From NCBI RefSeq assembly GCF_032444005.1, contig NC_091284.1, positions 195,052,001-195,116,000 of the forward strand: a stretch of DNA of 64,000 nucleotides, read 5' to 3'. This DNA is from Ranitomeya imitator (lineage: Eukaryota). A program made the translations under genes and the position numbers. This document shows, piece by piece, positions 228 to 41,521 of the stretch; positions within the stretch are counted from its first letter, which is position 1, and every line of letters begins with the position of its first letter. Below the pieces are notes generated by a model. That model was not told the DNA's origin, did no database searches, and saw nothing but the letters and a program-made list of their open reading frames with translations.

Positions 228-1647
228 TCCACACTAACCGGTATGTATATACTATATATTGTGTATGGGTGTTTTTACAACATTATGGACTGTATTGTTC
301 TTTATATATAGCCACACTTGGTCAGTCCTGCACAACTATTGATTCCCTTTGAGTCTTTTTGTATGGTTAGTAACTGTACTTTTGTGTACTGGAGGCACCT
401 ATCCCCTGCCCGCTTAGGTGCATGCTATGTGTAGCGCGGGGATTGTCTTCCCTTTGTCATGTTTTTATCTGGTATAATTATTAATAAAGTTTTTTGCATA
501 TTTACATATATTTGGACTGTTTGCTGCTTCTTTTCTTTGGTTGGTTTTGGTCTTTAAGTATCGCAGTTTGTCCACTATGGTCCTATCCTTCGTCCCATTT
601 TTTCCAAATATGAGTATACCCTATTTGGGTTAAATTAACGATGCTGGTGACCTTGCTTTCTTCCACATTATTATTCTGCTTAATTATAACATATATGCTG
701 CATCTTCAAAACCAACCTGCCGCTGTCTTTAGCTGATTCTAGCACAGTTTCAGTCCTGCACTGCCATCTTGTAATTCGCACATTTGACTGACCAGAAATC
801 AATGATAATGGTCACAAGCTCTCAATGTAAGTCTATGAGAGCCTTCTTATGGCTATCATAGACGTACATTTAGTTGTGTTTCTGTATCGTCCAGCAATTG
901 CTGGAGCGATCCGACAGCTAAAAACCTGAAGAAGATGACAGGACTGGCTTCAATACCAAATGCAGACATCAGCTGCTAAGTATAGGGCTAGGGCAGGTAA
1001 CTTACATTAGTGACACCACTCCAGTAGTAAATTTAATGAAAATACTGGAGGATTGGAACTTTAAAGCAAACACACAGATCATAGTGACAATTGTGTATTG
1101 TGACTGGACTTTAATGCTACAGGCACACCAAGCAAATGAACCTCTGCCATGTATCAGTGAATCTTTCTAAGGATTGTGAATATCTGTGAAAGTGCAGTTT
1201 TATAAGCAAAAACTACTCAGACATTAACACTCCTTTAAAAGCTGTTCTGGAATAGTTTGTAGCTACATTAAAGTGATTGCTCACTAAAAGAAAACCCATT
1301 TTAATGCTCCCAGTGTGCTGAGTAAAATACAAAAGCATACTAACCTCCTGGACCATTCCTCTTAGCACTTGTGTCATCTGGTGATCTCATGATATTGTTT
1401 ATGTCACATAAGAGCTGTAGACTATTAGAGGCTGCCTATGCTCTGCAGCCTTCCCGAGGGGCACTTCAATCCTTTATTATAGGCCCCCTGACTGGTGTGC
1501 CCCATTTACAAGGAGTTAAATCTTGTGTCCCAATGTTCCCTGCTTCTCCTATCTCATCCCTTCCTGTTTGTCATTATGTCAACTTCCCCCTTTTCCTCCC
1601 AATCTGCTCCTCTTTATAAAGGATGTCCCAGCATCTTCCTGCCTGGG

Positions 1648-2106
1648 ACACAATCAGTGATGGTTTGGGGAGCCATGTCATCTGCTGGTATAGGTACGCT
1701 GTGTTTTATCAAGACCAAAGTCAGCACAGCCATGTACAAGTTAATTTTAGAGCATTTCATGTTTCCCTCTGCAGACAAGCTTTTTGGAGAGGGAAATTTA
1801 AATCTCCAGCAGGATTTGGCGCCTGTCCACACTGCCAAAAGTACCAATACCTGGTTTAGAAACAACAATATCACTGTGCTTGATTGGCCAGCAAACTCGT
1901 CTGACCTTAACCCCATAGAGAATCTATGGGGTATTGTCAAGATGAAGATGAGAGACACCAGACCCAACAATGTAGACGAGCTGAAGGCTGCTATCAAAGC
2001 AACCTGGGCTTCCATAACTCCTCAGCAGTGCCACAGGCTGATCGCCTCCATGCCATGCCACATTGATGCAGTAATTGATGCAAATGGAGCCCCGACCAAG
2101 TATTGA
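1648..2106 (+). pseudogene. Tc1 DD34E transposase C-terminal fragment
   Basis: Motifs VMVWGAMS, QQDLAPVH, WPANSSDLNPIENLW and GAPTKY*. The first ~50 aa of the track ORF 1495-2106 are unrelated flank. Confidence 0.9.
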
Positions 2107-8642: not shown

Positions 8643-9050
8643 CCATATTTTGCAGACTATAAGATGCACGTGACCATAAGGCGCACCACAAATTTTGAGG
8701 AGGAAAACAGGAAAAAAGCCTAGATTCGAGATCGATGAGCTGAGATCTCAATCTGTTCATGTGCCACCTCCAGCGGCCATTTTTCTAAAGCCCACCACCA
8801 GGAGAGCAATGTGTAGAGCAGGGACTCAGCTCCTGTCTGCATGCTGACATTTTCATGAAGCCCATCACCAGCACACCCTCTTCTCCCAGCCCAGTGCTGC
8901 CAACTTCCTGCCGCATAAAACTTTGCTTTCTGTGACCACGTTCTACCGCTGCCACCCCCCTGGAAAGCTACATTTGGACTAAAAGATGCACCCACATATT
9001 CCTCCAAAATTTGGGAGGAAAACGTGAATGTTATAGTTTTCAAAATATGG
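8643..9050. mobile_element. Tc2/pogo-like MITE, 408 bp
   Basis: Imperfect TIR ccatattttgcagactataa / ttatagttttcaaaatatgg. TA at 8641-8642 and 9051-9052. Confidence 0.75.
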
Positions 9051-9119
9051 TACATTTTAATGAATAGATCTTGCAATAAAAATAAGTTCCACAATTGGAT
9101 GTTTTATAAAATGTTCCTG

Positions 9120-9451
9120 AGTTGAGATAATCTTATAAATGTGCCCCTCCTATGTACTGTGTAAGGGCTATTTCTGACCATCCAGAGCCATGGTCTTAAC
9201 ATACTACAGCTAATGGCAGGGAAGGAAGCAATAGAGGGTATACATACTGCACAATACAGCATGGGATCACAGCTGCTGTTTGTATGAGATAAAACATGTA
9301 CAAAGTAAGAAAATGCTTTACCTCATAAACCTTTCTTTGGCTTCCTCCCCAGGAAGGACATGTTGTATGTCCAGACCATGTTCCTGGAAAGTAAGACACA
9401 GCCGTTGCACAGTACATAGCAGGGGCACATTTATCAAATTATCTCAGCACT
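9120..9451. mobile_element. Degenerate MITE with ~75-bp inverted arms
   Basis: gagataatcttataaatgtgcccctcctatgtactgtg... pairs with ...cacagtacatagcaggggcacatttatcaaattatctc. Termini are eroded. Confidence 0.6.
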
Positions 9452-9643
9452 GGTAAAATAAATTCGTACATCCAATTATGGTACTTTTTTAAATTTTATT
9501 CCAAGATTTATTGATTAAAATGCACTTTGTTTGTGGGAATGCCAATATAAGCCCTACTGTTAAATTTAAATTGATAAGAAAAAAGTGACCTTTACAGGAA
9601 GGTTTTTCCTGGACAAACCTTCATCAACAGCTTCGCTCTGCAG

Positions 9644-12600
9644 GGGGCGTGGTTTGCAGGGGACAGGAGCAGACATGCCGTTACAGAGCTCCTGAATAAT
9701 CCACTATATTGAGCTACTTTTGGCTTCCAAAAAGTGGAACTTATAGATCTATAGGCTTGGAAAACCTTTGGTCCTTATTTACAACAAATAAAATGAAGAA
9801 TATAGCGGATATTACAAGGACAACAAGCACTAATGCTTCTCACCCTGTAACAAGGCCTCCAATCAAGATGGTCGCCACACAGGCAAACATGAGAGGAAAG
9901 TCCTTCAGGGTTTCTGTCACCCATGGAATAGAAAGAGCTGGAGCCAAGAAGTTTCCGGTAAAAGATGTGAGAAAAGTCCCATTTGCTCCTGTGTTGGGGG
10001 GACCTCAGATGTTCCCCTAGACAACAGGGATTCAAGATAGAAGAATACCAACGGCTGTGTTGAATCGCCGTCAGCTGTTGCGGAGGTGATATGCCAGACA
10101 ACGTCAGTGCTGCCACCAGCAAAGAACCTTGCACTCCCCATGGCACCGCTACCCGCTTAAAAGAATGAGAAGAAGAGCTGGGAGTTTGCTGTGAGTTTGG
10201 TAGCCGCGACGCTGCGGAAGGAAGGACCCCAGGACTTGTCCCTTACCTTAACACCAGGCAAGTGCTTCAGGACCAACTCGGTCCAGTAGGGGCTGGAAAG
10301 CAAGGCCCGATGCGGCCCGGTGATTCCTCCGCCGGCCGCTTGAGATGTCACCGCATGCAGAGTGACTGATGCAGCGGCGGTGAGGGAAGAGGGAGTCCCG
10401 CCACTGCAAGGTGTTCAGCTGTGTTGTGAAGCAGCGAATGGTACACCACCACTACTATATAGCGCCACTCAGCCTCTTAGTGCTTCAGAGAGGTGTGCTA
10501 CCTTTATCCTTCATATATTTGGCCAAAAATCTCAGGGGAAATTGACAATTACCCAAACAATAAGGGGCAATCATGCAGAAGCTACACTACAGAAGGTGAA
10601 GTGGCTGATGCGGCAAGAGTTAGAGAGGAGAGAGTCTTGCCACTACAAAGTGGTGGAATAGCGTTTGGAACACCGCTACAGTTATATAATGCTTCACAAC
10701 CTCTTCTTATATTGAGGAGAGGTGCCACCCTTAAACCTTCTTTTGATACCCCTAAAATCAAAGGGGAAACTCATGAAAACCCTGACAATAATGGCAACTA
10801 TGTAGAAGCCCATCTGTTAAAGGGATTTTATCAACAAATTGGAATGGCTGTAACCAGTCCTCTGACACATCAGAAAGTGACACCTTTAAACAAATACGGT
10901 CACAACAAAAATCTATACTAGAAGAAACCAGGCTTCTTTGTATTAAAAGCTTTGAAGAAATAATCCAAAAACTACTTCCTAATTTGACCTCTACTATGGA
11001 ATCAGCCGACAAAAAAAATAGCGACACAGTAGATCAAAATGAACAGCTGGATGTAAACTATGATACAGATAATTCTTCTAATTCATCAGAGGGGCTAGAA
11101 AGTGTCCACTCAGAAGAATTTACCAAAATGATGGATACCATTCTGACAAAAATTCATCCCAACATTCCTCCTCAGAGAGTTCTACTGAATACGAGACTTA
11201 TGAGCCCATAGGAAAATTCCTATTCCAGCCAAATAAAATTAATCTTGGGTCAAGAGAAATCGGATGCAGGGCCTGAGCACCATATCTCTAATGTTTATTT
11301 AATAGATAATATACCAGCTTCTGAAGACTACCCATCTGAGAGCTTTATGATCAATATCTGCAGAGCCTTTTTAACATCTGCAAACATCTTGGAAAAGAGT
11401 ACTAATACACGTAGATACGAATCTAAAATATCCGACCTTCAACAATCAAACACAGTAAAAGCCTCTGAAACTTTTATCAAAAAGCTATTTAAAGATACAC
11501 TACATTTTATAGTCAAAGACTCTAATTTAAATTCTACCAAGGTCCCTAATGCCCCTCTTCAAGACTCAAAAATAACAGACTTTCTAGACAAAAACTACCG
11601 GATCCTGCCCTCTATCCATGCTCATAGTCCACAAATACTCTCAGACTCTCTGGAGAGGATCCAAAAAGACATCAACTACTTTAGAGACTACTTGGCTAAT
11701 TATGAAGACTTCAAAAGGAAAAATAACATAAAAATTAGAGGAATGCCGGAGTCGGTCCAGCCCTCTCAGTTAAAAAATTATATTTCTTCAATGATCTCTC
11801 ACTTATTACCCAAAAACAAAGGAAAAAATCTGATCAAGAAGGTTTTCAGAATCCAAAGGCCACTCTCTCTCCCTACAAACATTGCTCGAGACGTCATGGT
11901 GTCCCTCTATCCTACAGGGGTAAAGAATGATCTCCTTATGCTGACAAGAGACTCAAAACACCTTCCATCTCTGTACAGCAACTTATCTTTTTTCAAGGAC
12001 TTGTCTAAAGATACCCTACAAAAACGAAAATCATTCATTCAAACCACTCGGGAACTTTTATGCACCGGAATACCGTACCAATGGAAAAAGACTTCCAATC
12101 TATAAGTGAAATTTGCTTCAAAATTGTTCACACTCTCATCTCCGGAGGAAGGAATTAACTTTCCGAAAAGAACAGGATTGACATCTTCTGCTGTTTCTTC
12201 CGATACCTCCTCTCTGTGTACATCAAATATACATCCTACTTGAAAAGACCTTTATTTCACTTGTTATTTTACTAAAAAGAACCGAACATTGCCCTCCAAC
12301 CAGTCTTACGGTCACCTTAAGGTGTTCCCAGACTTGAGAGGTTTTCATACTTTACATAATATATACTGACTTTTATTTTCAGACGCTGATATTTAGCAAC
12401 ATTTAATTTGATGTCATATGAAATTGTATATGTGTACTGTTTGAGTTTCTATTTCAGGTGCTGATATTAAGCGGCAGTTGTGTTGTATAAACCTACGTGA
12501 ATGTCTGTATGTATACCTGTCTTTTTTCCCTTTTCCCTATATTATATGGGGTTTTTCCTTTTTTTCCCCTGCACCTTGCTCTCCCTTATTCTTTACCCTT

Positions 12601-12644
12601 CCCCGTTATAAAATTTATAAAACCAATAAAGATTATTGGAAAAG
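9644..12644 (+). mobile_element. L1-derived ORF1-only (HAL1-like) retroelement, 3.0 kb, TSD-flanked
   Basis: 16-bp direct repeat cagcttcgctctgcag at 9628-9643 and 12645-12660. G-rich 5' start ggggcgtgg. L1 ORF1 homology, then a ~400-bp T-rich 3' UTR with AATAAA at 12625-12630 and a short A-rich end. No ORF2. Confidence 0.8.
10362..12243 (+). pseudogene. Disrupted long ORF1p: duplicated N-terminal module, acidic linker, L1 ORF1 coiled-coil end/RRM/CTD
   Basis: L1 ORF1 motifs YEDFKRKNNIKIRGMPE, FRIQRP...ARDV, FKDLSKDTLQKRK and IPYQW. Reading past the stop at 12103-12105 gives FTLSSPEEG and ends at TGA 12241-12243. ORFs 10984-11211 and 11245-12105 share a frame. Confidence 0.75.
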
Positions 12645-13399
12645 CAGCTTCGCTCTGCAGCATAAAATATCTCACAAAAAGGTATAGCATTGGCAAAAAG
12701 AACTTGAGCTAAAACTGTTTCTCTGTCCCAAAGGAGTGTTTCTAGTATGTAAGGATGCCTTTTGAGTTAAAAGGAGCCCTTTCTACATTTTAAAGGGAAA
12801 TGTTAAAAATATTGAGCTTCTGCAGAAATATGCAGTGGCTTTTTTGGATAACATCATCCTTTTGAGACCAAATTGAAAAATCCATTTAAATCAGGTTCAG
12901 ACTATTCTATAAACATTTAGAGAAGCTGGGTTTACTATAAATATAAAAAAAGTGTGCAATAAGTATAGAACAGCCAAAACATGTGGGCAACATTTTAGAA
13001 AGAGGCATGATTAAGCCCAAAATAAATAAGGTAGAGTAAATACAGGGTTGGCCATGGCAGCTCACTAAAAAGCAAGTAAGGCCGTGATGAACCTGCACCT
13101 TGCCACCCCGCCTGACATCGCTATTACATCAGAAGAATCATGCAGTGTGGTCTCCCCACTTGCACCAGGTTTCTCATACCCTGGGGACATGTAAGGACTG
13201 CTTGGTACAGTTTTACACAGTCACCCCTGTCTACACGGGACCATGGAGGCATGGGGAGTGAGATGTGGCCCATGCAATCATTGCTGTGGCACCAGACTCG
13301 CTCACAATCTTGAGAGTATGAGAGGCCCTTTTCACTAGCACTGGTGAAACAGAGCTCTGCCAGCCAAGTAGGATTGCCACCAGTTCCTCGTTAGATATA

Positions 13400-17578: not shown

Positions 17579-19380
17579 GCACATCAGGGGCTCTCCAAAC
17601 GCGACATGGCGTCCGATCTCAATTCCAGCCAATTCTGCGTTGAAAAAGTAAAACAGTGCTACTTCCCTTCCGAGCTCTCCGGTGCGCCCAAACAGGGGTT
17701 TACCCCAACATATGGGGTATCAGCGTACTCAGGACAAATTGGACAACAACTTTTGGGGTCCAAGTTCTCTTGTTATCCTTGGGAAAATAAAAATGTGGGG
17801 GGCTAAAAATCATTTTTGTGGGAAAAATAAGATTTTTTTTATTTTTGCGGCTCTGCGTTGTAAACTGCAGTGAAACACTTGGGGGTTCAAAGTTCTCACA
17901 ACACATCTAGATAGGTTCCTTGGGAGGTCTAGTTTCCAATATGGGGTCAATTGTGGGGGGTTTGTACTGTTTGGGTACATCAGGGGCTCTGCAAATGCAA
18001 CGTGACGCCTGCAGACCAATCCATCTAAGTCTGTATTCCAAATGGCGCTCCTTCCCTTCCGAGCTCTGCCATGCGCCCAAACAGTGCTTCCCCCCACATA
18101 TGGGGTATCAGCGTACTCAAGACAAATTGGACAACAACTTTTGGGGTCCAATTTATCCTGTTACCCTTGTGAAAATACAAAACTGGGGACTAAAAAATCA
18201 TTTTTGTGAAAAAAAAAAAGAATTTTTATTTTCATGGCTTTGCGTTATAAACTGTAGTGAAACACTTGGGGGCTCAAAGCTCTCAAAACACATCTAGATA
18301 AGTTCCTTAGGGGGTCTACTTTCCAAAATGGTGTCACTTTTGGGTGGTTTCAATGTTTAGGCACATCAGGGGCTCTCCAAACGCAACATGGCGTCCCATC
18401 TCAATTCCAGTCAATTTTGCATTGAAAAGTCACATGGCACTCCTTCCCTTCCGAGCTCTGCCATGCGCCCAAACAATGGTTTACACCCACATATGGTGTA
18501 TCAGCGTACTCAGGACAAATTGCACAACAACTTTTGTCATCTAATTTCTTCTCTTACCCTTGGGAAAATAAAAAATTGGGGGCAAAAAGATCATTTTTGT
18601 GAAAAAATATGATTTTTTATTTTTACGGCTCTGCATTATAAACTTCTATGAAGCACTTGGTGGGTCAAAGTGCTCACCACACATCTAGATAAGTTCCTTA
18701 AGGGGTCTACTTTCCAAAATGGTGTCACTTGTGGGGGGTTTCAATGTTTAGGCACATCAGGGGCTCTCCAAACGCAACATGGCGTTCCATCTCAATTCCA
18801 GTCAATTTTGCATTGAAAAGTCAAATGGCGCTCCTTCCCTTCCGAGCTCTGCCATGCGCCCAAACAGTGGTTTATCCCCACATATGGGGTATCAGCGTAC
18901 TCAGGACAAATTGCACAACAACTTTTGTGGTCTAATTTCTTCTCTTACCCTTGGGAAAATAAAAAATTGGGGGCAAAAAGATCATTTTTGTGAAAAAATA
19001 TGATTTTTTATTTTTACGGCTCTGCATTATAAACTTCTATGAAGCACTTGGTGGGCCAAAGTGCTCACCACACATCTAGATAAGTTCCTTATGGGGTCTA
19101 CTTTCCAAAATGGTGTCACTTGTGGGGGGTTTCAATGTTTAGGCACATCAGGGGCTCTCCAAACGCAACATGGCGTCCCATCTCAATTCCAGTCAATTTT
19201 GCATTGAAAAGTCAAATGGCGCTCCTTTCCTTCTGAGCTCTGCCATGCGCCCAAACAGTGGTTTATCCCCACATATGGGGTATCAACGTACTCAGGACAA
19301 ATTGTACAACAACTTTTGGGATCCATTTTCTCCTGTTACCCTTGGTAAAATAAAACAAATTGGAGCTGAAATAAATTTTG
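17579..19380. repeat. Tandem ~390-bp unit, 4 full copies plus a partial fifth
   Basis: gcacatcaggggctctcc anchors at 17579, ~17975, 18361, 18752 and 19143 (spacing 386-396). Confidence 0.9.
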
Positions 19381-21262: not shown

Positions 21263-24200
21263 CTAGGACCTGCCAAAAGGACCAATGGAATGTGCCGCAG
21301 AGCCTGAGCACATGACCCTCGATCTCCAACGGGAGATCTTGCCCTGGGCATGCTCAGTGTGTGCAGATAAGGACTTAGTCCCAGAGAAGTCCGCTCGCTG
21401 CTGACCAGAATAGGCTTCAAAGGCAGAAGCTGGAGAAGCAGCAATAACTCTTCTCACAGAGTCAGACTGAGCGAGACGCTGGGATCGACGTCCCTGCTGA
21501 GCAGACTCCACTGCGGCTGGAGGGGAATGGGAGACCGCAGCGGAGACGGATCGAGATTCCCCCTGTGCAGCAGAGGAAACTCGACTCCTAACATTACCCC
21601 CCCTCCTAGGGCCCCCCCCTCCTTGGGCCTCGCCACGCTCGAAGGCAGCAATGAGCTGTGGGGCCCGAATGTTTTCAGCAGGCTCCCAAGACCTGTCCTC
21701 TGGACCATAACCCTTCCAATCCACCAAATAAAACTTTTTGCCGCGTACCACCTTGCACCCCAAAATAGCGTTCACCTCGTAATCGTCCGTAGACGAACCC
21801 GATGTCCCGGCAGATGACTCGGAAAACCGGGACATGTATACGGGTTTCAAGAGGGACACATGAAAGGTGTCGGTGATACCCAAGCGTGGAGGAAGAGCCA
21901 GGCGGTAGACCACGGGATTAACCTGCTCGAGGACCTTGAATGGGCCCAAGTAGCGAGGAGCAAACTTAGTGGACTCAACTCGCAGCCTGATGTTACGGGC
22001 GGAGAGCCACACCAAGTCACCAGGAGCAAAGGCCGGGGCAGGGCGCCGATGTGCATCGGCGGAGGACCTCATTCTCTCCTTCGAGGCCCGAATGGCATCC
22101 TGAGTGCGGTCCCAAATGTCCCGTGCCTCCACTGCCCAGTCTGCCACCCTGGAGTCAGCAGAGGACACGGGCATAGGCACAGGAACCCGCGGATGCTGGC
22201 CGTAATTAAGGAGGAAAGGAGTCTGACCGGTGGAATCGGCTACAGCGTTATTAAGGGCGAACTCTGCCCATGGTAATAAAGATGCCCAGTCATCCTGCCT
22301 GGCAGAAACAAAATGTCGCAGATATGTGACCAGAGTCTGATTGGCCCTCTCTACCAACCCATTCGTCTCGGGATGATATGCGGAAGAGAGATTTAACTCA
22401 ATGCTGAGAAGACGACAAAGCTCTCTCCAGAACCGAGACGCAAACTGGGGACCCCGGTCACTGACAATTTTGTCTGGCATGCCGTGTAGGCGGAAGATGT
22501 GTCTTATGAACAATGCTGCCAAGGCCCGTGCAGAAGGTAACCGTGGGAGCGGCACCAAGTGCACCATTTTCGAGAAATGATCGGTAATTACCCAAATGGC
22601 GGTACAGCCGCGAGACTTGGGCAAACCCACTACAAAGTCCATCCCGACCATCTCCCAGGGCCTGTCTGCCACCGGCAAGGGATAGAGTAACCCAGACGGC
22701 CGTTGTCGAGGAGACTTATTTTTGGCGCATGAGACACACGCCAGAACGTAATCCCTGACATCTCGCAGCATATGCGGCCACCAGTACGTCCTCGCCAGCA
22801 GCTCAGATGTCCTTTTAGTCCCAAAGTGTCCACCCACCCTGGAGGAATGAGCCCAAGAGAGAACCTCCGGTCGCAAATTTATGGGCACAAAAGTCTTGCC
22901 CGGAGGCACAGACTCAAGCGACACCGGAGCCACGGTTCTCAAGCTCTCAGAAGGAACAATAAGCCGAGGCTCTCCTTCCTCCTCCTCAGATGACACAACA
23001 GAGCGAGAAAGAGCATCAGCTCGAATGTTCTTCTCCCCAGCGACATAATGGAGGGTGAAGTGGAATCGGGAGAAGAATAAGGACCATCTGGCCTGGCGAG
23101 AATTTAGCCTCTGGGCTGTTTGCAAATATAGCAAATTTTTATGGTCTGTAAATACTTGAAAGGGAAAACGAGCCCCCTCCAAGAGATGTCTCCACTCAGA
23201 GAAAGCCAATTTCATCGCTAGCAACTCCCTGTCCCCGATGGAATAATTCCTCTCCGCTGGTGTGAAGGTCTTGGAGAAGAAAAAGCACGGATGCTTCCGA
23301 CCTTGAGCATCCTTCTGGAAGAGGACTGCTCCAGCACCAACGGAAGAGGCATCCACCTCCATTATAAACGGCTTATCGACATCGGGACGATGTAGGATGG
23401 GAGCGCTAGCAAAATGAGACTTAGTAGAAGAAAAGGCCCTGGAGACCTCTTCAGACCACACTTTGGGATTTGCTCCCTTCTTGGTGAGGGCTACCAAGGG
23501 AGCTACCAAAGTTGAGAAATGGGGGATGAACTGGCGGTAATAATTAATGAACCCCATAAAGCGCTGCACCGCTTTAAGTGAATGGGGTTCTTGCCAGTCC
23601 ATCACAGCCTGTAGTTTGGCAGGATCCATAGCCAATCCTTGGGCAGAGATGATATAGCCCAGGAAAGGTAAAGACTCCTGCTCAAACACACACTTCTCCA
23701 ACTTTGCGTAAAGAGAGTTTGCCCGTAAGAGGTCGAAGACTCTGCCAACATCTCTCCGGTGGGAGTCAATATCTGGAGAGAAGATGAGAATATCATCCAG
23801 ATAGACTACGACCGAGGTGGAAAGCATATCCCGGAAGATGTCGTTGACAAAGTCTTGGAAAACGGCTGGGGCATTACAGAGCCCGAAGGGCATCACCAGA
23901 TACTCATAATGCCCATCTCTGGTGTTAAACGCCGTCTTCCATTCGTCCCCCTCACGAATGCGAATCAGGTTATAAGCTCCCCGCAGGTCTAATTTGGTAA
24001 ATACCTTAGCTCCCCGTAGCCTATCAAAAAGCTCAGAAATCAGGGGCAGCGGGTACTTATTTTTAACGGTGATGGCGTTAAGACCCCTGTAGTCTATGCA
24101 AGGACGCAACTCTCCATTCTTCTTCTGTACGAAGAAGAACCCTGCCCCAGCTGGTGACACTGACTTCCTAATAAATCCTCTTGCCAAATTCTCCTGGATG

Positions 24201-25735
24201 TATTGGGACATAGCCTCCGTTTCCGGGAGAGAGAGGGGATAGACACGTCCCCGAGGAGGTTCTGCTCCAGGCAAGAGATCTATAGGACAGTCATAGGGAC
24301 GGTGAGGCGGAAGGGTCTCCGCGGCTTTTTTGGAAAAGACGTCTGCATAAGACCAATAGTGTTTGGGGAGAGTAGAGAGATCTGCGGGTATCTCAGTGGT
24401 GGAAACCTGAACGCACTCTTTCACACATCTGCCCTTGCAGGATTCACTCCAACCCAATATCCTCCCAGAGGTCCACTCAATATGTGGGGAGTGGAAACGA
24501 AGCCAGGGCATTCCCAGCAGAATCTCATCCATTCCCTCGGGAAGGACAAGAAGGGAAATAGTCTCCTGGTGGGATGGGGACATGGCTAACGTGAAAGGGA
24601 CAGTCTGATGTGTGATCTGTAATGGAAGTGTCGACCCATTCACCACTCTCACGGTTACTGGTTTGGCTAGCATAGCCAGAGGTATTGCGTGGCGCTGAGC
24701 AAAAGCAGAAGACATAAAATTTCCCTCTGCTCCTGAGTCCACACAAAGCTCTACTGTAAGAGTGGATGTGCCTAACAGGATTGTCCCTTTAAAGGACAAT
24801 TTTGAGGAAAATGCCGCGGTGTCCAGTGAACCTCCTCCAATGGACACTAGACGCGATCGTTTTCCCGACCGCCGTGGACATTTATTAGCGAAATGTCCCG
24901 GTTGCTGGCAATTTTTACATAGCACAGGTACTCGAGCGGTCTGAGACCTAGATCCCGCTCGAGAAACCTCCATGGCCTCATGGGAGTCGGACGCCATAAC
25001 AGGAGATTCTAGAGGTTTGGCAAAGATGGGAGCCAGCCGAAACCTCTGCCTACACTGGGTCCGCTCCAACCTCCGCTCGTTAAAACGGAGATCGATGCGG
25101 GTAGCTATAGTAATAAGCTCCTCCAGTGTGGCGGGAATCTCCCTGGTGGCCAAGGCGTCCTTCACATGATCTGCCAGTCCTTTCCAGAACACCGGAATAA
25201 GGACTTTATCCGGCCATTCCAGCTCAGAAGCTAGAGTCCGGAATAGGATGGCAAACTGGCTGACCATGGACGAAGCCTGAGTAATTGCCAACAATTGGAG
25301 CGCGGTATCGTGGGTGACACGAGGTCCCAGAAAGACCTGCCTCAGAGCGTCCAGGAAGATAGGAGCACTCTGCACCACACGATCACCACGTTCCCAAAGC
25401 GGCGTTGCCCACTCCAACGCCCTGCCCGACAAGAGAGATATAATGAATCCCACTTTCGCCCGTTCCGTAGGAAAACGTGCAGCCAGCAGCTCGAGATGTA
25501 TGGAGCACTGGCTCACGAATCCCCGACATGGCTTACTGTCGCCAGCAAACTTGTCTGGAAGCGGGAGACGGGATAAGGTCGGAGCAGGGGTGGCAGCGGA
25601 CAAACTGGCTGCAGCTGCACTTGCAGCCTGAACAGCAACAGCAGTAACGTCCACAGCTGAGGTTGTGCGCTCAAGAGCCGCCAACCTACCCTCCAGCTGC
25701 TGGATGTACTGCTGTAGACGCTGACCGTCTGCCAT
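21263..25735 (-). CDS. Gag-Pol polyprotein, 1490 aa, intact (Gag, CCHC knuckle, PR, RT, RNase H, IN, chromodomain)
   Basis: [49 protein letters not shown], and chromodomain [34 protein letters not shown]. The last ~110 codons lie in the 3' LTR. Confidence 0.97.
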
Positions 25736-29369: not shown

Positions 29370-32300
29370 TCACAACAGTACCCCCCCTTGAGGAGGGGTC
29401 ACCGAACCCTCACCAGAGCCCCCAGGCCGATCAGGATGAGCCAAATGAAAGGCACGAACTAGATCGGCAGCATGAACATCAGAGGCAAAAACCCAGGAAT
29501 TATCCTCCTGACCATAACCCCTCCACTTGACCAGGTACTGGAGTTTCCGTCTCGAAACACGAGAACCCAAGATCTTTTCCACCACATACTCCAACTCCCC
29601 CTCAACCAACACCGGGGCAGGAGGATCAACGGAGGGAACCATAGGCGCCACGTATCTCCGCAACAACGACCTATGGAACACATTATGGATGGCAAAAGAA
29701 GCTGGGAGGTCCAAACGAAATGACACAGGATTAAGAATTTCAGAAATCTTATATGGCCCAATGAAACGAGGCTTAAACTTAGGAGAGGAAACCTTCATAG
29801 GAACATGACGAGATGACAACCAAACCAAATCCCCAACCCGAAGTCGGGGACCAACACAGCGCCGGCGGTTAGCGAAACGTTGAGCCTTCTCCTGGGACAA
29901 TGCCAAATTGTCCACCACATGAGTCCAAATCTGCCGCAACCTGTCCACCACAGTATCCACACCAGGACAGTCCGAAGGCTCAACCTGCCCTGAAGAGAAA
30001 CGAGGATGGAAACTAGAATTGCAGAAAAAAGGAGAAACCAAAGTAGCCGAGCTGGCCCGATTATTAAGGGCGAACTCAGCCAAAGGCAAAAAGGACACCC
30101 AATCATCCTGATCAGCAGAAACAAAGCATCTCAGATATGTCTCCAAAGTCTGATTAGTTCGTTCGGTTTGGCCATTAGTCTGAGGATGGAAAGCCGAAGA
30201 AAAAGACAAATCAATGCCCATCTTAGCACAAAAGGACCGCCAAAACCTTGAAACAAACTGGGAACCCCTGTCCGAGACGATGTTCTCCGGAATGTCATGC
30301 AAGCGAACCACATGCTGGAAAAACAATGGCACCAAGTCAGAGGAGGAAGGCAATTTAGACAAGGGTACCAAATGGACCATCTTAGAGAAGCGATCACAAA
30401 CCAACCAAATGACCGACATCCTTTGAGAAACAGGGAGATCAGAAATAAAATCCATGGAAATATGCGTCCAGGGCCTCTTCGGGACCGGCAAGGGCAAAAG
30501 CAACCCACTGGCACGAGAACAGCAGGGCTTAGCCCGAGCACAATTCCCACAGGACTGCACAAAAGAAAGCACATCCCGTGACAAAGAAGGCCACCAAAAG
30601 GATCTAGCCACCAAATCTCTGGTACCAAAGATTCCAGGATGACCAGCCAACACCGAACAATGAACCTCAGAGATAACTCTACTAGTCCATCTATCAGGGA
30701 CAAACAGTTTCTTCGCTGGACAACGGTCAGGTCTATCAGCCTGAAACTTCTGCAGCACACGCCGCAAATCAGGGGAGATGGCAGACAAAATTACCCCCTC
30801 TTTAAGAATACCCGCCGGCTCCGGAACACCCGGAGAGTCAGGCACAAAACTCCTTGACAGGGCATCAGCCTTCACATTCTTAGATCCCGGAAGGTATGAA
30901 ACCACAAAATCAAAACGGGAGAAAAAGAGCGACCATCGAGCCTGTCTAGGATTCAACCGTTTGGCAGACTCGAGATAAGTCAAATTCTTGTGATCCGTCA
31001 AGACCACCACGCGATGTTTAGCTCCTTCAAGCCAATGTCGCCACTCCTCGAATGCCCATTTCATGGCCAACAACTCTCGATTGCCAACATCATAATTGCG
31101 CTCAGCAGGTGAGAATTTTCTAGAAAAGAAGGCACATGGTTTCATCACCGAGCCATCAGAACTTCTTTGCGACAAAACAGCCCCTGCTCCAATCTCAGAA
31201 GCATCAACCTCGACCTGAAACGGAAGCGAAACATCTGGCTGGCACAGCACAGGGGCAGAAGAAAAACGATGCTTCAACTCCTGAAAAGCCTCTACAGCCG
31301 CAGAGGACCAATTGACCACATTAGCACCTTTCTTGGTCAAATCAGTCAATGGTTTAGCAACACTAGAAAAATTAGCGATGAAGCGACGGTAAAAATTAGC
31401 AAAGCCCAGGAACTTCTGTAGGCTCTTCACAGATGTCGGCTGAGTCCAATCATAAATGGCCTGGACCTTAACAGGGTCCATCTCGATAGTAGAAGGGGAA
31501 AAAATGAAACCCAAAAATGAAACCTTCTGAACTCCAAAGAGACACTTAGACCCCTTCACAAACAAGGAATTAGCACAAAGAACCTGGATCACCATTCTGA
31601 CCTGCTTCACATGAGACTCCCAATTATCCGAAAAGACCAAAATGTCATCCAAATATACAATCATGAATCTATCCAGGTACTCTCGGAAGATGTCATGCAT
31701 AAAGGACTGAAACACAGATGGAGCATTAGAAAGCCCAAATGGCATAACCAGGTACTCAAAATGGCCCTCGGGCGTATTAAATGCTGTTTTCCATTCATCG
31801 CCCTGTTTAATTCGCACCAGATTATACGCCCCTCGAAGATCTATCTTGGTGAACCAACTAGCCCCCTTAATTCGAGCAAACAGATCAGACATCAGCGGCA
31901 AAGGATACTGAAATTTGACTGTGATCTTATTAAGAAGGCGGTAATCAATACAAGGTCTTAAAGAGCCATCCTTCTTGGCCACAAAAAAGAACCCTGCTCC
32001 CAATGTTGACGACGACGGGCGAATATGACCCTTCTCCAAGGATTCCTTTATATAACTCCGCATAGCAGCGTGCTCTGGCACAGATAGATTAAACAGTCGG
32101 CCCTTAGGAAACTTACTACCGGGAATCAAATTAATAGCACAATCGCAGTCCCTATGAGGAGGTAGGGCATCGGATTTGGGCTCCTCAAATACATCCCGGT
32201 AATCTGATAAAAACTCAGGGACTTCAGAAGGAGTGGAAGGCGAAATTGACAACAATGGAACATCACCATGTACCCCCTGACAACCCCAGCTGGACACAGA

Positions 32301-33437
32301 CATAGATTTCCAATCAAACACTGGATTATGGACCTGTAGCCATGGCAACCCCAAAACGACCACATCATGCAGATTATGCAACACCAAAAAGCGAATATCC
32401 TCCTGATGTGCAGGAGCCATGCACATGGTCAATTGCGTCCAGTATTGAGGTTTATTCTTGGCCAAAGGCGTAGCATCAATTCCTCTCAATGGAATAGGAT
32501 GCTGCAAGGGCTCCAAGGAAAAACCACAGCGCCTGGCAAACTCCAAGTCCATCAAATTCAGGGCAGCGCCTGAATCCACAAATGCCATAACAGAATATGA
32601 TGACAGAGAGCAAATCAGAGTAACGGACAAAAGAAATTTTGACTGTACCGTACCAATGGTGGCAGACCTAGCGAACCGCTTAGTGCGCTTAGGACAATCG
32701 GAGATAGCATGAGTGGAGTCACCACAGTAAAAACACAGTCCATTCTGACGTCTGTGTTCTTGCCGTTCAGCTCTGGTCAAAGTTCTATCACACTGCATAG
32801 GCTCAGGCCTATTCTCAGAGAACACCGCCAAATGGTGCACAGCTTTGCGCTCACGCAAGCGCCGATCGATCTGAATGGCCAATGACATAGACTCATTCAG
32901 ACCAGCAGGCGTGGGAAATCCCACCATGGCATCCTTAAGGTCTTCAGAAAGACCCTTTCTGAAAATTGCCGCCAGGGCACATTCATTCCACTGAGTAAGC
33001 ACAGACCACTTTCTAAACTTCTGACAGTACACCTCCGCCTCATCCTGACCCTGACACAAAGCCAGCAAGATTTTCTCTGCCTGATCCACGGAATTTGGTT
33101 CATCATAAAGCAATCCTAGCACCAGAAAAAACGCATCAACATCACGCAATGCAGGATCTCCTGGCGCAAGGGAAAATGCCCAGTCTTGAGGGTCACCACG
33201 TAATAAAGAAATAATGATTTTTACTTGTTGAGCGGGGTCACCAGAGGAGCGTGGTTTCAAAGCTAGAAACAGTTTACAATTATTTTTGAAATTCAGAAAC
33301 TTAGATCTATTTCCAGAAAATAAATCAGGAGTAGGAATTCTAGGCTCTAACATCGGATTCTGAACCACAAAATCTTGAATGTTTTGTACCCTTGCAGTGA
33401 GATGATCCACACAAGAGGACAGACCTTGAATGTCCAT
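29370..33437 (-). CDS. Gag-Pol polyprotein with chromodomain, intact; ~1355 aa from the likely start MDIQGL
   Basis: CFYCGDSTHAISDC, VDSGA, YLDD, EVDAS, HCSVLAGH..CGNC, and YVVEKILGSRVSRRKLQYLVKWRGYG. The track ORF extends to 33551. Confidence 0.95.
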   Translation of the reverse strand: MDIQGLSSCVDHLTARVQNIQDFVVQNPMLEPRIPTPDLFSGNRSKFLNFKNNCKLFLALKPRSSGDPAQQVKIIISLLRGDPQDWAFSLAPGDPALRDVDAFFLVLGLLYDEPNSVDQAEKILLALCQGQDEAEVYCQKFRKWSVLTQWNECALAAIFRKGLSEDLKDAMVGFPTPAGLNESMSLAIQIDRRLRERKAVHHLAVFSENRPEPMQCDRTLTRAERQEHRRQNGLCFYCGDSTHAISDCPKRTKRFARSATIGTVQSKFLLSVTLICSLSSYSVMAFVDSGAALNLMDLEFARRCGFSLEPLQHPIPLRGIDATPLAKNKPQYWTQLTMCMAPAHQEDIRFLVLHNLHDVVVLGLPWLQVHNPVFDWKSMSVSSWGCQGVHGDVPLLSISPSTPSEVPEFLSDYRDVFEEPKSDALPPHRDCDCAINLIPGSKFPKGRLFNLSVPEHAAMRSYIKESLEKGHIRPSSSTLGAGFFFVAKKDGSLRPCIDYRLLNKITVKFQYPLPLMSDLFARIKGASWFTKIDLRGAYNLVRIKQGDEWKTAFNTPEGHFEYLVMPFGLSNAPSVFQSFMHDIFREYLDRFMIVYLDDILVFSDNWESHVKQVRMVIQVLCANSLFVKGSKCLFGVQKVSFLGFIFSPSTIEMDPVKVQAIYDWTQPTSVKSLQKFLGFANFYRRFIANFSSVAKPLTDLTKKGANVVNWSSAAVEAFQELKHRFSSAPVLCQPDVSLPFQVEVDASEIGAGAVLSQRSSDGSVMKPCAFFSRKFSPAERNYDVGNRELLAMKWAFEEWRHWLEGAKHRVVVLTDHKNLTYLESAKRLNPRQARWSLFFSRFDFVVSYLPGSKNVKADALSRSFVPDSPGVPEPAGILKEGVILSAISPDLRRVLQKFQADRPDRCPAKKLFVPDRWTSRVISEVHCSVLAGHPGIFGTRDLVARSFWWPSLSRDVLSFVQSCGNCARAKPCCSRASGLLLPLPVPKRPWTHISMDFISDLPVSQRMSVIWLVCDRFSKMVHLVPLSKLPSSSDLVPLFFQHVVRLHDIPENIVSDRGSQFVSRFWRSFCAKMGIDLSFSSAFHPQTNGQTERTNQTLETYLRCFVSADQDDWVSFLPLAEFALNNRASSATLVSPFFCNSSFHPRFSSGQVEPSDCPGVDTVVDRLRQIWTHVVDNLALSQEKAQRFANRRRCVGPRLRVGDLVWLSSRHVPMKVSSPKFKPRFIGPYKISEILNPVSFRLDLPASFAIHNVFHRSLLRRYVAPMVPSVDPPAPVLVEGELEYVVEKILGSRVSRRKLQYLVKWRGYGQEDNSWVFASDVHAADLVRAFHLAHPDRPGGSGEGSVTPPQGGVLL

Positions 33438-33562
33438 CTCTACACCTGTGTCCTGAACCACCCAAAGGTCTAGGGGAAAAGAAAGACAAAACACAATGCA
33501 AAGAAAAAAAAATGGTTTCAGAACTTCTCTTATCCCTCTATTGAGATGCATTAATACTTTGG

Positions 33563-39900: not shown

Positions 39901-41521
39901 TCTTCTTCTGCACGAAGAAGAACCCTGCCCCAGCAGGTGACACTGGCTTCCTGATGAACCCTCTTGCCAGATTTTCCTGGATGTACTGTGACATTGCCTC
40001 CGTCTCCGGGAGAGATAGCGGATAGACTCGACCCTGGGGAGGCTCAGCACCAGGCAAGAGGTCAATAGGACAGTCATAGGGGCGATGGGGCGGAAGGATC
40101 TCCGCCGCCTTTTTGGAGAATACGTCTGCATACGACCAATACTGCTTGGGGAGAGAGGAAAGATCTGCGGGTACCTCAGTTGTAGCTACCTGAACGCACT
40201 CCCTCTGACACCTACCCCCACAAGATTCACCCCATCCCAGAATTCTGCCTGAGGACCACTCGATATGAGGAGAGTGGTACCGTAGCCAAGGTATTTCCAA
40301 CAGGACTTCATCAATTCCCTCTGGAATGACGAGCAGGGAAATAATCTCCTGATGAGATGGCGACATGGACAGAGTAAAAGGGATGGTCTGGTGAGTTATC
40401 TGTGAGGGCAGAGTCGACCCATTCACCACTCGTACCGTTACAGGTTGAGCTAGCATAACCAGAGGTATTGCGTGGCGTTGGGCGAAGGCAGAAGACATAA
40501 AATTGCCCTCCGCCCCAGAATCCACGTAGAGCTCTACCGAGTGGGAGAATGAGCCTATAGTAATTGTCCCCTTAAAGGACAATTTAGAGGCAAACGTCGC
40601 CGTGTCTAGTGTACCTCCACCTACGACCACTAGACGCTGACGTTTCCTCGACCGCTGAGGACATCTGGTGGCTAAATGTCCAGACTGCTGGCAAACATGA
40701 CAGACCCTGAGTGCACAAGCGGTCAGGGACTTAGGTCCCGCTTGTGACACTTCCCTGGCCTCATGTGACTCAGGAACCAGGACCGGAGATTCCAGAGGTT
40801 TGGCGAAAGTAGGAGCCAGCCGAAACCTCTGCCTACACTGGGCTCGCTCTAACCTCCGCTCGTTAAAACGGAGGTCAATTCGAGTGGAGACTGTTATTAA
40901 CTCCTCCAGTGTGGCAGGAATCTCCCTAGTGGCCAGAGCGTCCTTTACATGGTCAGCCAAGCCCCTCCAAAATATGGGGATAAGAGCTTTATCCGACCAT
41001 TCCAGCTCAGATGCTAAAGTGCGGAATTGGACAGCAAAATGACTGACCAAGGACTCACCCTGAGTTAATGCCAGCAGTTGGAGCGCAGTGTCATGGGTGA
41101 CTTGAGGTCCTAAAAAGACCTGTTTTAAAGTGCTCAAAAACAGAGGAGCACTCTGCACCACATGATCGCCACGCTCCCACAGCGGCGTAGCCCATTCCAA
41201 CGCCCTGTCCGACAATAGAGACACAATAAATCCCACCTTAGCCCGCTCTGTGGGGAAACGTGCAGCCAGAAGCTCGAGATGAATAGAGCACTGACTCACG
41301 AATCCCCTACAAAATTTGCTATTACCAGAAAATTTTCCTGGCAGCGGGAGGCGAGAAAATGTCGGAACAGGGGTGGCAATGGACAAAGTTGCTGCAGCCA
41401 CGCTGGCAGCCTGTACAGCAACTGCGGTAACATCCACAGCTGAGGTTGCGCTCTCGAGAGCCACCAACCTACCCTCCAGCTGCTGTATATACCGCAGGGA
41501 TTGCTGTTTGTCCGTCATCAC
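36903..41521 (-). pseudogene. Gag-Pol of element C with a 1-bp frameshift in RT (ORFs 39680-41521 and 36903-39725)
   Basis: C reads gttaaagccatcttcc at ~39710 where A reads gttaaacgccgtcttcc, so one base is missing in the KTAFN codons. Confidence 0.93.

What the first reader, a model, noticed from the sequence alone, without database searches (positions are those of the whole stretch)
9628..12660. ORF1-only L1-derived retroelement with an unrecognised protein module: candidate novel HAL1-type family
Seen: a 3.0-kb unit bounded by a 16-bp TSD. It has an L1-like G-rich 5' end, a long disrupted ORF ending in L1 ORF1p RRM/CTD (ancestral stop at 12241-12243), then directly a T-rich 3' UTR, AATAAA and a short A-rich tail, with no ORF2. 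Established: half-L1 (HAL1) elements encode only ORF1 and borrow ORF2p in trans. Inferred: this unit retrotransposed as is, and its ORF1p (at least ~600 codons, possibly from ATG 9868) is much longer than a typical L1 ORF1p, with N-terminal sequence I do not recognise.
Basis: partly seen in the sequence, partly recalled or inferred. Interest (0 to 1): 0.72.

Follow-up and report, generated by a model that had tools for sequence, protein, structure and literature searches.

The report
Decayed frog half-L1 retroelement copy
This is a dead 3-kb copy of a frog jumping gene that keeps only the RNA-binding gene (ORF1) of an L1 element and none of its copying enzyme; the gene is unusually long because of a floppy, repeat-built front part rather than a new folded module.

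Summary
A perfect 16-bp target-site duplication (9628-9643 / 12645-12660) brackets a 3,001-bp unit: a G-rich 5' end, a broken ORF, a 401-bp T-rich 3' UTR, AATAAA and a tail of only four A's. There is no room for an ORF2.

Pfam sees nothing. An exhaustive HMMER search found 512 relatives, and a profile built from them hits human L1 ORF1p at E 1.4e-25. The predicted fold also matches the human ORF1p trimer.

The nearest relatives are two Ranitomeya imitator proteins of 625 and 678 aa. With the window copy they form a separate, well-supported clade among frog ORF1ps of 300-470 aa.

The conserved core (ATG 10996 to stop 12241) is 415 codons with two in-frame stops. A further ~275 codons upstream (10169-10995) are far more open than chance and include two ~239-bp tandem units. 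The ~600+-codon reading is therefore plausible; a start at ATG 9868 is not.

In the intact relative the extension is predicted to be disordered, not a folded module.

I could not test whether this is a family that spread without ORF2, because the tools that read other genome copies were closed. The scan has already noted look-alike ORF1-only elements elsewhere in this genome.

The parts
9628..9643 (.). 5' copy of the 16-bp target-site duplication CAGCTTCGCTCTGCAG
   Evidence: 100% identical to 12645-12660
9644..10168 (+). 5' UTR-like leader with a G-rich start (GGGGCGTGG...); not coding by the openness test
   Evidence: many stops in all frames. The 51-codon ORF from ATG 9868 has no significant similarity to the relatives' N-termini
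10044..10443 (+). CpG-rich, GC-rich patch (GC 56-60%, CpG o/e ~0.7, against 0.2-0.27 in the flanks); candidate internal promoter island and/or GC-rich start of the ORF
10169..10995 (+). Probable decayed N-terminal extension of ORF1. It is a chain of overlapping open stretches (10169-10366, 10344-10658, 10481-10918, 10792-...) that needs 3 frameshifts. Candidate ATGs at 10310 and 10355
   Evidence: 3 defects against 8.0 +/- 1.6 in dinucleotide shuffles (2/500), 5 on the minus strand, 8-11 in flanking DNA. ATG positions
10361..10809 (+). Two tandem ~239-bp units (10361-10582 and 10600-10809), 65% identical. Both are open in the same unit-relative frame
   Evidence: 0 stops in the shared frame against 4-10 in the other frames; 46% aa identity. 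No third unit upstream or downstream
10996..12243 (+). Conserved ORF1 core, 415 codons from ATG 10996. In-frame stops at 11209-11211 (TAG) and 12103-12105 (TAA); ancestral stop at 12241-12243
   Evidence: P0151 residues 256-637 align to 10978-12102 (E 1e-44); P0001 aligns through to 12201
11338..11529 (+). Three predicted helices (residues 43-106 of the 11212 piece), upstream part of the coiled-coil region. A disordered linker follows (11539-11613)
   Evidence: pLDDT 80-91. Ordinary frog ORF1ps align from query residue 61-73 on
11626..11715 (+). 30-residue helix with a heptad pattern directly before the RRM (coiled-coil stub)
   Evidence: The equivalent helix of P0001 (430-460) forms the three-chain interface
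11725..11997 (+). RRM domain of L1-type ORF1p
   Evidence: 2w7a TM 0.73; 2yko/2ykp E about 1e-6
12007..12240 (+). C-terminal domain (CTD) of L1-type ORF1p, interrupted by the TAA at 12103
   Evidence: the A1 profile matches 2ldy, 2jrb and the L1TD1 CTD entry 2lr6; alignment to P0001 through the stop; CTD strands in the P0001 model
12244..12624 (+). T-rich 3' UTR (40% T over 12244-12644) with a sense-strand polypyrimidine tract around 12519-12606 and a 38-nt imperfect repeat (12367-12404 / 12442-12479). No ORF2 remnant detected
   Evidence: No LINE-type RT among the window's ORFs of 170 aa or more. No Rfam family
12625..12630 (+). AATAAA polyadenylation signal, 14 nt before the end of the element
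12640..12644 (+). Very short tail, AAAAG
12645..12660 (.). 3' copy of the target-site duplication

Best explanation
The stretch is a decayed copy of a non-autonomous, L1-derived retrotransposon that encodes only ORF1p. It is HAL1-like, but it arose within frog L1s, not from mammalian HAL1. It belongs to a poison-frog lineage whose ORF1p is about twice the usual length.

Inferred life cycle:
- An internal promoter in the leader or CpG-rich patch drives a ~3-kb polyadenylated RNA.
- The RNA is translated into an ORF1p made of a long disordered N-terminal region, a short trimerising coiled coil, an RRM and a CTD.
- ORF1p coats its own RNA.
- The ribonucleoprotein borrows the endonuclease and reverse transcriptase (ORF2p) of an autonomous L1 in trans. 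Target-primed reverse transcription then makes the 16-bp duplication.

Shown here: the anatomy, the L1-ORF1p homology and fold, the absence of ORF2 at this locus, and the long-ORF1 clade.

Inferred: transcription, cis-binding, use of ORF2p in trans, and that the source RNA already lacked ORF2.

The N-terminal extension most likely arose by the ORF spreading 5'-wards into GC-rich, tandemly repeated leader sequence. It would act as an intrinsically disordered region.
For: - Perfect TSD exactly at the ends of the unit.
- 512 HMMER relatives, all named ones from frogs.
- Profile A1 hits human and mouse L1 ORF1p: 2ykp E 1.4e-25, 2ldy 1e-20, 2jrb 4e-9.
- The AF2 model has the human ORF1p trimer as its best Foldseek matches.
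- Only 401 bp of T-rich, ORF-less sequence lie between the ancestral stop and the tail.
- WINDOW + P0001 (625 aa) + P0151 (678 aa) form a clade with SH-aLRT 99 on a long stem, among ORF1ps of 300-470 aa.
- P0001 and P0151 are collinear over 94% of their length at 54% identity, N-termini included.
- The upstream 828 bp are far more open than shuffles, and both tandem units are open in the same frame.
- The N-terminal 314 aa of P0001 are predicted disordered.
- Three copies of P0001 425-625 are modelled as a trimer through helix 430-460. Score 0.62, best of 3 controls 0.35. The mark was reached by 21 of 30 proteins solved as pairs of one chain and by 0 of 23 solved as single chains. The runs agree in at least 86% of contacts and the partner's pLDDT is at least 78. 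The human ORF1p trimer is solved, so the pass may come from memory.
- Leads only: earlier notes of this scan list several other ~2.9-3.0-kb ORF1-only units in the same genome.
Against: - No second copy of this element could be read, so neither 'family' nor 'moved without ORF2' is shown.
- The tail is only four A's, and the target site (TCATCAA|CAGC) is not the TT|AAAA of mammalian L1 endonuclease.
- Pfam's L1 ORF1 model does not hit this copy or its nearest relatives.
- Sequence similarity between the upstream 10169-10995 stretch and the relatives' N-termini is not significant.
- Codon-position bias between the two tandem units is weak: 29/30/39 differences.
- No autonomous partner with a shared 3' end was identified.
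Confidence: 0.68

Rival explanations
1. Processed pseudogene (retrocopy) of a host gene that was itself domesticated from L1 ORF1, analogous to mammalian L1TD1. The mRNA of an ORF1-derived cellular gene was reverse-transcribed once by L1 machinery.
For: - The anatomy is exactly that of a retrocopy: leader, ORF, 3' UTR, AATAAA, short tail, TSD.
- The closest intact relative is annotated as a gene, 'mucin-3A-like', with two transcript records in R. imitator.
- Few intact relatives are in the protein databases.
Against: - At least three or four mutually divergent (33-54% identity) members exist in R. imitator. Some are broken by a Gypsy insertion or fused to unrelated exons. That looks like an old, diversified repeat lineage, not one conserved gene.
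- This copy is only 40-46% identical to them.
- Earlier scan notes (leads only) describe several ORF1-only units in this genome.
Confidence: 0.15
2. One-off product. A full-length L1 lost ORF2 by internal deletion or template switching, during or after insertion, and this shape never propagated.
For: A TSD survives post-insertion internal deletions, so the TSD alone cannot exclude this reading. No other copy was read here.
Against: - The break would have to fall exactly at the ancestral ORF1 stop and leave no ORF2 remnant in 401 bp.
- The ORF1 belongs to a distinct long-ORF1 clade.
- Earlier notes (leads only) report similar ~3-kb units elsewhere.
Confidence: 0.12
3. The 5' half (about 9700-10900) is an unrelated nested insertion, so the 'long ORF1' is an artefact.
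For: There is a sharp GC shift (up to 59% at 10100-10400, against 35-39% in the core). No significant similarity to the relatives lies upstream of 10978.
Against: - No internal TSD or terminal repeats bracket the region. The only candidate pair (9831 / 10687) is at chance level.
- The open-frame chain runs without a gap into the core ORF.
- The intact relatives also carry 300-350 N-terminal residues rich in GC-encoded amino acids, with ~74-residue repeats.
Confidence: 0.04

Closest known systems
Mammalian HAL1 (half-L1) elements (Smit 1999; Bao & Jurka 2010, as cited in PMC5753468)
   Same: L1-derived and non-autonomous. Encodes ORF1p only and is presumed to use ORF2p in trans. Per PMC5753468, HAL1 families arose independently several times.
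   Different: This one sits inside frog ORF1p diversity, so it is an independent origin in an amphibian. Its ORF1 lineage is 625-678 aa with a ~300-aa disordered extension. Its tail is very short. Multi-copy status was not shown here. No paper in the held library links HAL1 with frogs.
Human/mouse L1 ORF1p (PDB 2ykp, 2yko, 2ldy, 2w7a, 2jrb)
   Same: Coiled coil - RRM - CTD order. Profile E 1.4e-25. Fold match TM 0.56-0.73 by target length. Trimer modelled through the helix before the RRM.
   Different: About 18-20% identity. The continuous coiled coil is only ~30 residues, with further helices behind a disordered linker. The N-terminal region is far longer. The Pfam Transposase_22 model misses it.
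Ranitomeya imitator XP_069614618.1 'mucin-3A-like' (P0001, 625 aa) and XP_069609349.1 (P0151, 678 aa)
   Same: Nearest relatives: 40-46% identity over the core, the same C-terminal end, and the same domain order.
   Different: P0001 is intact, whereas the window copy has 2 stops and probably 3 frameshifts. P0001 carries a PAM2-like TLNYNAPVFIP motif (Pfam PF07145 E 0.7, below threshold), which the window copy does not keep. P0151 is cut off by a Gypsy gag junction, which it shares with P0023.
Mouse L1 5' tandem monomers (established knowledge); CR1 monomer arrays noted earlier in this genome (s1-271767)
   Same: Tandem ~0.2-kb units near the 5' end of a LINE-type element.
   Different: There are only two units, 65% identical, and both are open in the same frame and apparently part of the ORF. 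That fits a coding repeat better than promoter monomers.
L1TD1 (domesticated L1 ORF1 gene of mammals; PMC4161310)
   Same: An ORF1-derived protein without ORF2. The A1 profile also hits the L1TD1 CTD entry (2lr6/3soo, E 0.003).
   Different: L1TD1 is a single-copy host gene with duplicated RRM-CTD. Here there is one RRM-CTD, retroelement ends and a TSD.

Membership tests
L1-type (Type II) ORF1p | RRM domain homologous to L1 ORF1p | tested here: met
   Profile A1 against the PDB: 2ykp E 1.4e-25, 2w7a 8e-10. Foldseek: 2yko/2ykp/2ykq E about 1e-6, 2w7a TM 0.73.
L1-type (Type II) ORF1p | C-terminal domain (CTD) after the RRM | tested here: met
   The A1 profile matches 2ldy (RRM-CTD) at 1e-20 and 2jrb (mouse CTD) at 4e-9. 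The window aligns to the P0001 CTD through 12201, across the stop at 12103.
L1-type (Type II) ORF1p | Trimerising coiled coil N-terminal to the RRM | tested here: inconclusive
   A 30-residue helix with an a/d heptad pattern is predicted in the window copy. The intact relative P0001 425-625 x3 is modelled as a trimer: score 0.62 against best control 0.35. The mark was reached by 21 of 30 proteins solved as pairs of one chain and 0 of 23 solved as single chains. The pass may come from memory of the human trimer. The window copy itself was not tested.
L1-type (Type II) ORF1p | Match to Pfam Transposase_22 (PF02994) | tested here: not met
   No hit for the window pieces even at E 10, nor for P0001/P0151. 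A more distant frog relative, P0134, does hit (E 1.3e-5, above the cut-off). I read this as a sensitivity limit of a mammal-centred model.
HAL1-type (ORF1-only L1 derivative) | Encodes ORF1 but no ORF2 (no endonuclease or reverse transcriptase) | tested here: met
   401 bp of T-rich sequence without a long ORF lie between stop 12241-12243 and the tail.
HAL1-type (ORF1-only L1 derivative) | Insertion hallmarks of L1-type target-primed reverse transcription (TSD, poly(A) signal and tail) | tested here: inconclusive
   A perfect 16-bp TSD and AATAAA are present. The tail is only AAAAG, and the target is not TT|AAAA.
HAL1-type (ORF1-only L1 derivative) | Multi-copy family whose members share the ORF1-to-3'UTR junction and have different TSDs | not testable with these tools
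There is no other copy in the 64-kb window, and none in viral or metagenome contigs. Earlier scan notes are leads only.
HAL1-type (ORF1-only L1 derivative) | Descent from the mammalian HAL1 lineage | tested here: not met
   All named relatives are anuran, and the clade nests among frog ORF1ps. The element is HAL1-like by convergence, not a member of Repbase HAL1.
PAM2-bearing proteins (PABP MLLE ligands) | PAM2 motif LNxxAxxFxP | tested here: not met
   P0001 233-246 hits PF07145 at only E 0.7, 10.2 bits against a cut-off of 20. P0151 has no hit. In the window the aligned place reads LDVNYD + a 15-aa insert + SEEFTK.

The most novel reading that the evidence does not exclude
Poison frogs may harbour an independently evolved, ORF1-only L1 parasite whose ORF1 grew to twice the normal size by translating its own GC-rich, tandemly repeated 5' leader. 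That would create a long disordered arm. In intact members the arm carries a PABP-docking (PAM2-like) peptide. The arm would help the RNP condense on its poly(A) RNA and capture ORF2p from autonomous L1s in trans.
Probability: 0.15. Interest if true: 0.75.

Novelty: new variant of a known kind. Interest (0 to 1): 0.48.

Why it matters
In the literature I could search, HAL1-type elements are described only from mammals. An amphibian lineage that independently shed ORF2 while doubling ORF1 would show that 'half-L1' parasitism recurs across tetrapods.

It would also give a natural experiment on what ORF1p alone contributes to mobilisation in trans, including the role of a long disordered N-terminal region.

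Practically, intact members are annotated as host genes ('mucin-3A-like') and fragments are fused into gene models in frog genomes. Recognising the family would improve annotation of the very repeat-rich dendrobatid assemblies.

This particular locus is only a dead copy.

Tried and rejected
- Pfam on six ORF pieces, and again at E 10: nothing relevant.
- Word-indexed protein search with the 297-aa piece: no hit.
No copy-number, junction or context test was therefore possible.
- blastn and tblastn of the element against the window: no second copy.
- The search for related loci: nothing in viral contigs or metagenome contigs. The first metagenome try failed for lack of a conserved stretch.
- Frameshift-aware protein-to-DNA alignment of P0151, P0001 and P0014: homology does not extend upstream of about 11026. 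Shuffle tests of the N-terminal peptides were not significant.
- A third tandem unit was sought upstream and downstream; none found.
- TRF finds no array. Rfam finds nothing.
- ESM Atlas on P0001 1-430: no usable hit.
- Bao & Jurka 2010 (PMC2923044) is not held, so it is cited only through PMC5753468 and PMC4161310.
Full report
**Observation**

CAGCTTCGCTCTGCAG occurs at 9628-9643 and again at 12645-12660, 16 of 16 identical. By my arithmetic about 0.002 such pairs are expected by chance in the 4.3 kb searched. The pair also sits exactly outside a G-rich start (GGGGCGTGGTTTGCAGGGG..., 9644) and just after AATAAA (12625-12630) plus 14 nt ending in AAAAG.

The body is 3,001 bp. One frame (that of 9646) is open over 10792-11208, 11212-12102 and 12106-12240. 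It has single in-frame stops at 11209-11211 and 12103-12105 and a final stop at 12241-12243. The remaining 401 bp are 40% T with no long ORF. No other copy lies in the 64-kb window.

**What the ORF is**

Pfam gives nothing, even at E 10. A single-sequence search of the PDB gives human L1 ORF1p only at E 0.15, and the word-indexed protein search gives nothing.

The exhaustive HMMER search of 1.84 billion representatives gives 512 hits, 108 of them below 1e-10. A 44-sequence alignment of these (A1), used as a profile, hits:
- human L1 ORF1p 2ykp at E 1.4e-25;
- the RRM-CTD entry 2ldy at 1e-20;
- the RRM entry 2w7a at 8e-10;
- the mouse CTD 2jrb at 4e-9;
- the L1TD1 CTD entry (2lr6) at 0.003.

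An AlphaFold2 model of the 297-aa piece (mean pLDDT 79) shows a 30-residue helix, an RRM and the start of the CTD. Its 11 best Foldseek matches in the PDB are all human L1 ORF1p entries (E 1.6e-6 and weaker, TM by target 0.43-0.73).

One more distant frog relative (P0134) passes Pfam's Transposase_22 cut-off. I therefore read the Pfam blank as a sensitivity limit. The protein is an L1-type (Type II) ORF1p.

**Its lineage**

Every named relative is from a frog: Ranitomeya imitator, Bombina bombina, Pseudophryne corroboree or Pelodytes ibericus. Many are ORF1 fragments swallowed into gene models.

The best hit is P0001, R. imitator XP_069614618.1, annotated 'mucin-3A-like': 625 aa, E 1e-36. A second R. 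imitator protein, P0151 (678 aa), is 54% identical to P0001 over 94% of its length, the N-terminus included.

In a quick maximum-likelihood tree of 120 RRM-CTD cores, the window copy, P0001 and P0151 form a clade with SH-aLRT 99 on a long stem. The other complete proteins are 300-470 aa (this is the quick search, not the finished careful one).

P0001 ends ...SNGPT*, and this copy ends ...SNIHPT* at 12241-12243, so that stop is ancestral. P0151 and P0023 share a junction into Gypsy gag right after the CTD's start, so P0151 is itself an interrupted copy.

**How long was the ORF?**

Homology to P0151 reaches upstream to 10978 (E 1e-44, read across the stop at 11209). From ATG 10996 the conserved core is 415 codons, which is ordinary for frog ORF1ps.

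Upstream, three staggered open stretches overlap one another and the core: 10169-10366, 10344-10658 and 10481-10918. The 828 bp from 10169 to 10996 can be crossed with 3 frame defects. That compares with 8.0 +/- 1.6 in dinucleotide shuffles (2 of 500 reach 3), 5 on the minus strand and 8-11 in flanking DNA.

Inside this stretch are two tandem ~239-bp units (10361-10582 and 10600-10809), 65% identical:
- both are open in the same unit-relative frame, while the other frames hold 4-10 stops;
- the peptides are 46% identical;
- the excess of third-position differences is weak, 29/30/39;
- there is no third unit.

P0151 and P0001 also show ~74-residue repeats marked by REE..TPPT.PPT. However, direct similarity between the window's upstream peptides and those N-termini is not significant.

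I conclude that an ancestral ORF of about 640-690 codons, with candidate ATGs at 10310 or 10355, is likely, at roughly 70%. A start at ATG 9868 is not supported, because 9868-10169 adds three more defects.

**What is the 'unrecognised module'?**

In the intact relative P0001, residues 1-314 are rich in P, A, T, S, G and R, with net charge +18. They have no Pfam family and no Atlas look-alike. AlphaFold2 models them without any secondary structure at pLDDT about 40. The alignment is shallow there, so this is consistent with disorder rather than proof of it.

The order after that is:
- two helices (320-351, 367-381);
- an acidic serine-rich linker;
- a 25-residue helix (436-460);
- the RRM and the CTD.

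In the window copy the corresponding helices (11338-11529) align with the coiled-coil region of ordinary frog ORF1ps, whose alignments start at query residues 61-73. So there is no new folded domain. The novelty is an expanded, repeat-built, probably disordered N-terminal region, encoded by the GC- and CpG-rich part of the element (10044-10443: GC 56-60%, CpG o/e about 0.7).

Three copies of P0001 425-625 are modelled as a trimer through helix 430-460:
- score 0.62, best of 3 controls 0.35;
- the mark was reached by 21 of 30 proteins solved as pairs of one chain and by 0 of 23 solved as single chains;
- the runs agree in at least 86% of contacts, and the partner's pLDDT is at least 78;
- the human ORF1p trimer is solved, so the pass may come from memory and shows likeness only.

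**The PAM2 lead**

P0001 does carry TLNYNAPVFIP at 235-245, but Pfam PF07145 scores it at E 0.7, 10.2 bits, against a cut-off of 20. P0151 gives no hit. In this window the aligned place reads LDVNYD, then a 15-residue S/N-rich insert, then SEEFTK. The motif is not a feature of this copy. No paper in the held library links ORF1p with PAM2.

**Mechanism**

The best-supported reading is a HAL1-like life cycle. A ~3-kb polyadenylated RNA encodes ORF1p only. The protein binds that RNA, and an autonomous L1's ORF2p inserts it by target-primed reverse transcription, which leaves the 16-bp duplication.

Shown here: the anatomy, the homology and the absence of ORF2. Inferred: everything dynamic.

Two details are not textbook L1. 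The tail has only four A's, and the target (TCATCAA|CAGC) is not TT|AAAA.

**What could not be done**

The decisive test is other genomic copies sharing the ORF1-stop-to-3'UTR junction with different TSDs. Viral and metagenome contigs hold no relative.

The scan's earlier notes on this genome, which they call a poison frog, list other ORF1-only 'half-L1' units of 2.9-3.0 kb and one followed-up 'multi-copy' case. These are leads, not evidence. I could not compare their sequences, and the look-up by sequence was blank.

The rivals therefore stay open: a retrocopy of a domesticated ORF1 gene (about 0.15), a one-off loss of ORF2 (about 0.12) and a nested insertion in the 5' half (about 0.04).

Breaks are described by position only.

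**Comparison and verdict**

The element works like mammalian HAL1, which is described as a non-autonomous L1 derivative encoding only ORF1p that arose several times in mammals (PMC5753468, citing Smit 1999 and Bao & Jurka 2010). It is not a member of that lineage. I found no paper in the held library linking HAL1 with frogs, and no mention of HAL1 or ORF1 in the one poison-frog genome paper I read.

As a locus it is a dead copy. As a representative of a frog long-ORF1 half-L1 lineage it is a new variant of a known kind, already flagged elsewhere in this genome by this scan.

Noticed in passing
window 9030-9545: A ~490-bp foldback (long imperfect palindrome) lies 96 bp upstream of the insertion site. 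Arms 9116-9235 / 9334-9453 and 9043-9102 / 9468-9532. Single-strand DNA fold -100 kcal/mol, z -10.4. It looks like a MITE or foldback element.
   Followed up: partly
window 21266-25735, 29373-33551, 36906-41521 (minus strand): Three Ty3/Gypsy-type elements with long open gag-pol reading frames (1490 aa, 1393 aa, and 940 + 613 aa). Domains found: protease, RT, RNase H, integrase and chromodomain. They lie inside the region of another first-stage finding.
   Followed up: no
window 1495-2103 and 62467-63999: A Tc1-type DDE_3 transposase fragment on the + strand, and a 511-aa ORF with a zf-BED domain on the - strand, possibly hAT-like and running to the window end.
   Followed up: no
window 18400-18522, 18791-18913, 19182-19304: The translated first tandem unit of the element (10341-10658) gives weak tblastn matches (E 4e-4 to 7e-3) to three sites spaced 391 bp apart. 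These sites appear to be a tandem array in the neighbouring finding's region. The matches could be chance or composition.
   Followed up: no
P0001 (R. imitator XP_069614618.1) residues 235-245; window ~11047-11127: P0001 has a PAM2-like peptide, TLNYNAPVFIP, in its disordered N-terminal region (Pfam PF07145 E 0.7, below the cut-off). The motif is degenerate in P0151 (TLRYDAAPFTP) and broken by a 15-aa insert in the window copy.
   Followed up: partly
P0014, P0023, P0033, P0068, P0078, P0084, P0111, P0134, P0148: Frog gene models in public annotations contain L1 ORF1 fragments fused to unrelated domains: ion channel, KRAB-zinc-finger arrays, TAF1C, DCST1, a kinase, Gypsy gag. These are likely annotation chimeras caused by unmasked ORF1 sequences.
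   Followed up: partly
window 12519-12606: A sense-strand polypyrimidine (T/C) tract of ~90 nt sits in the 3' UTR just before AATAAA. From memory, mammalian L1 3' UTRs carry a polypurine tract instead (not checked here). Significance unknown.
   Followed up: no
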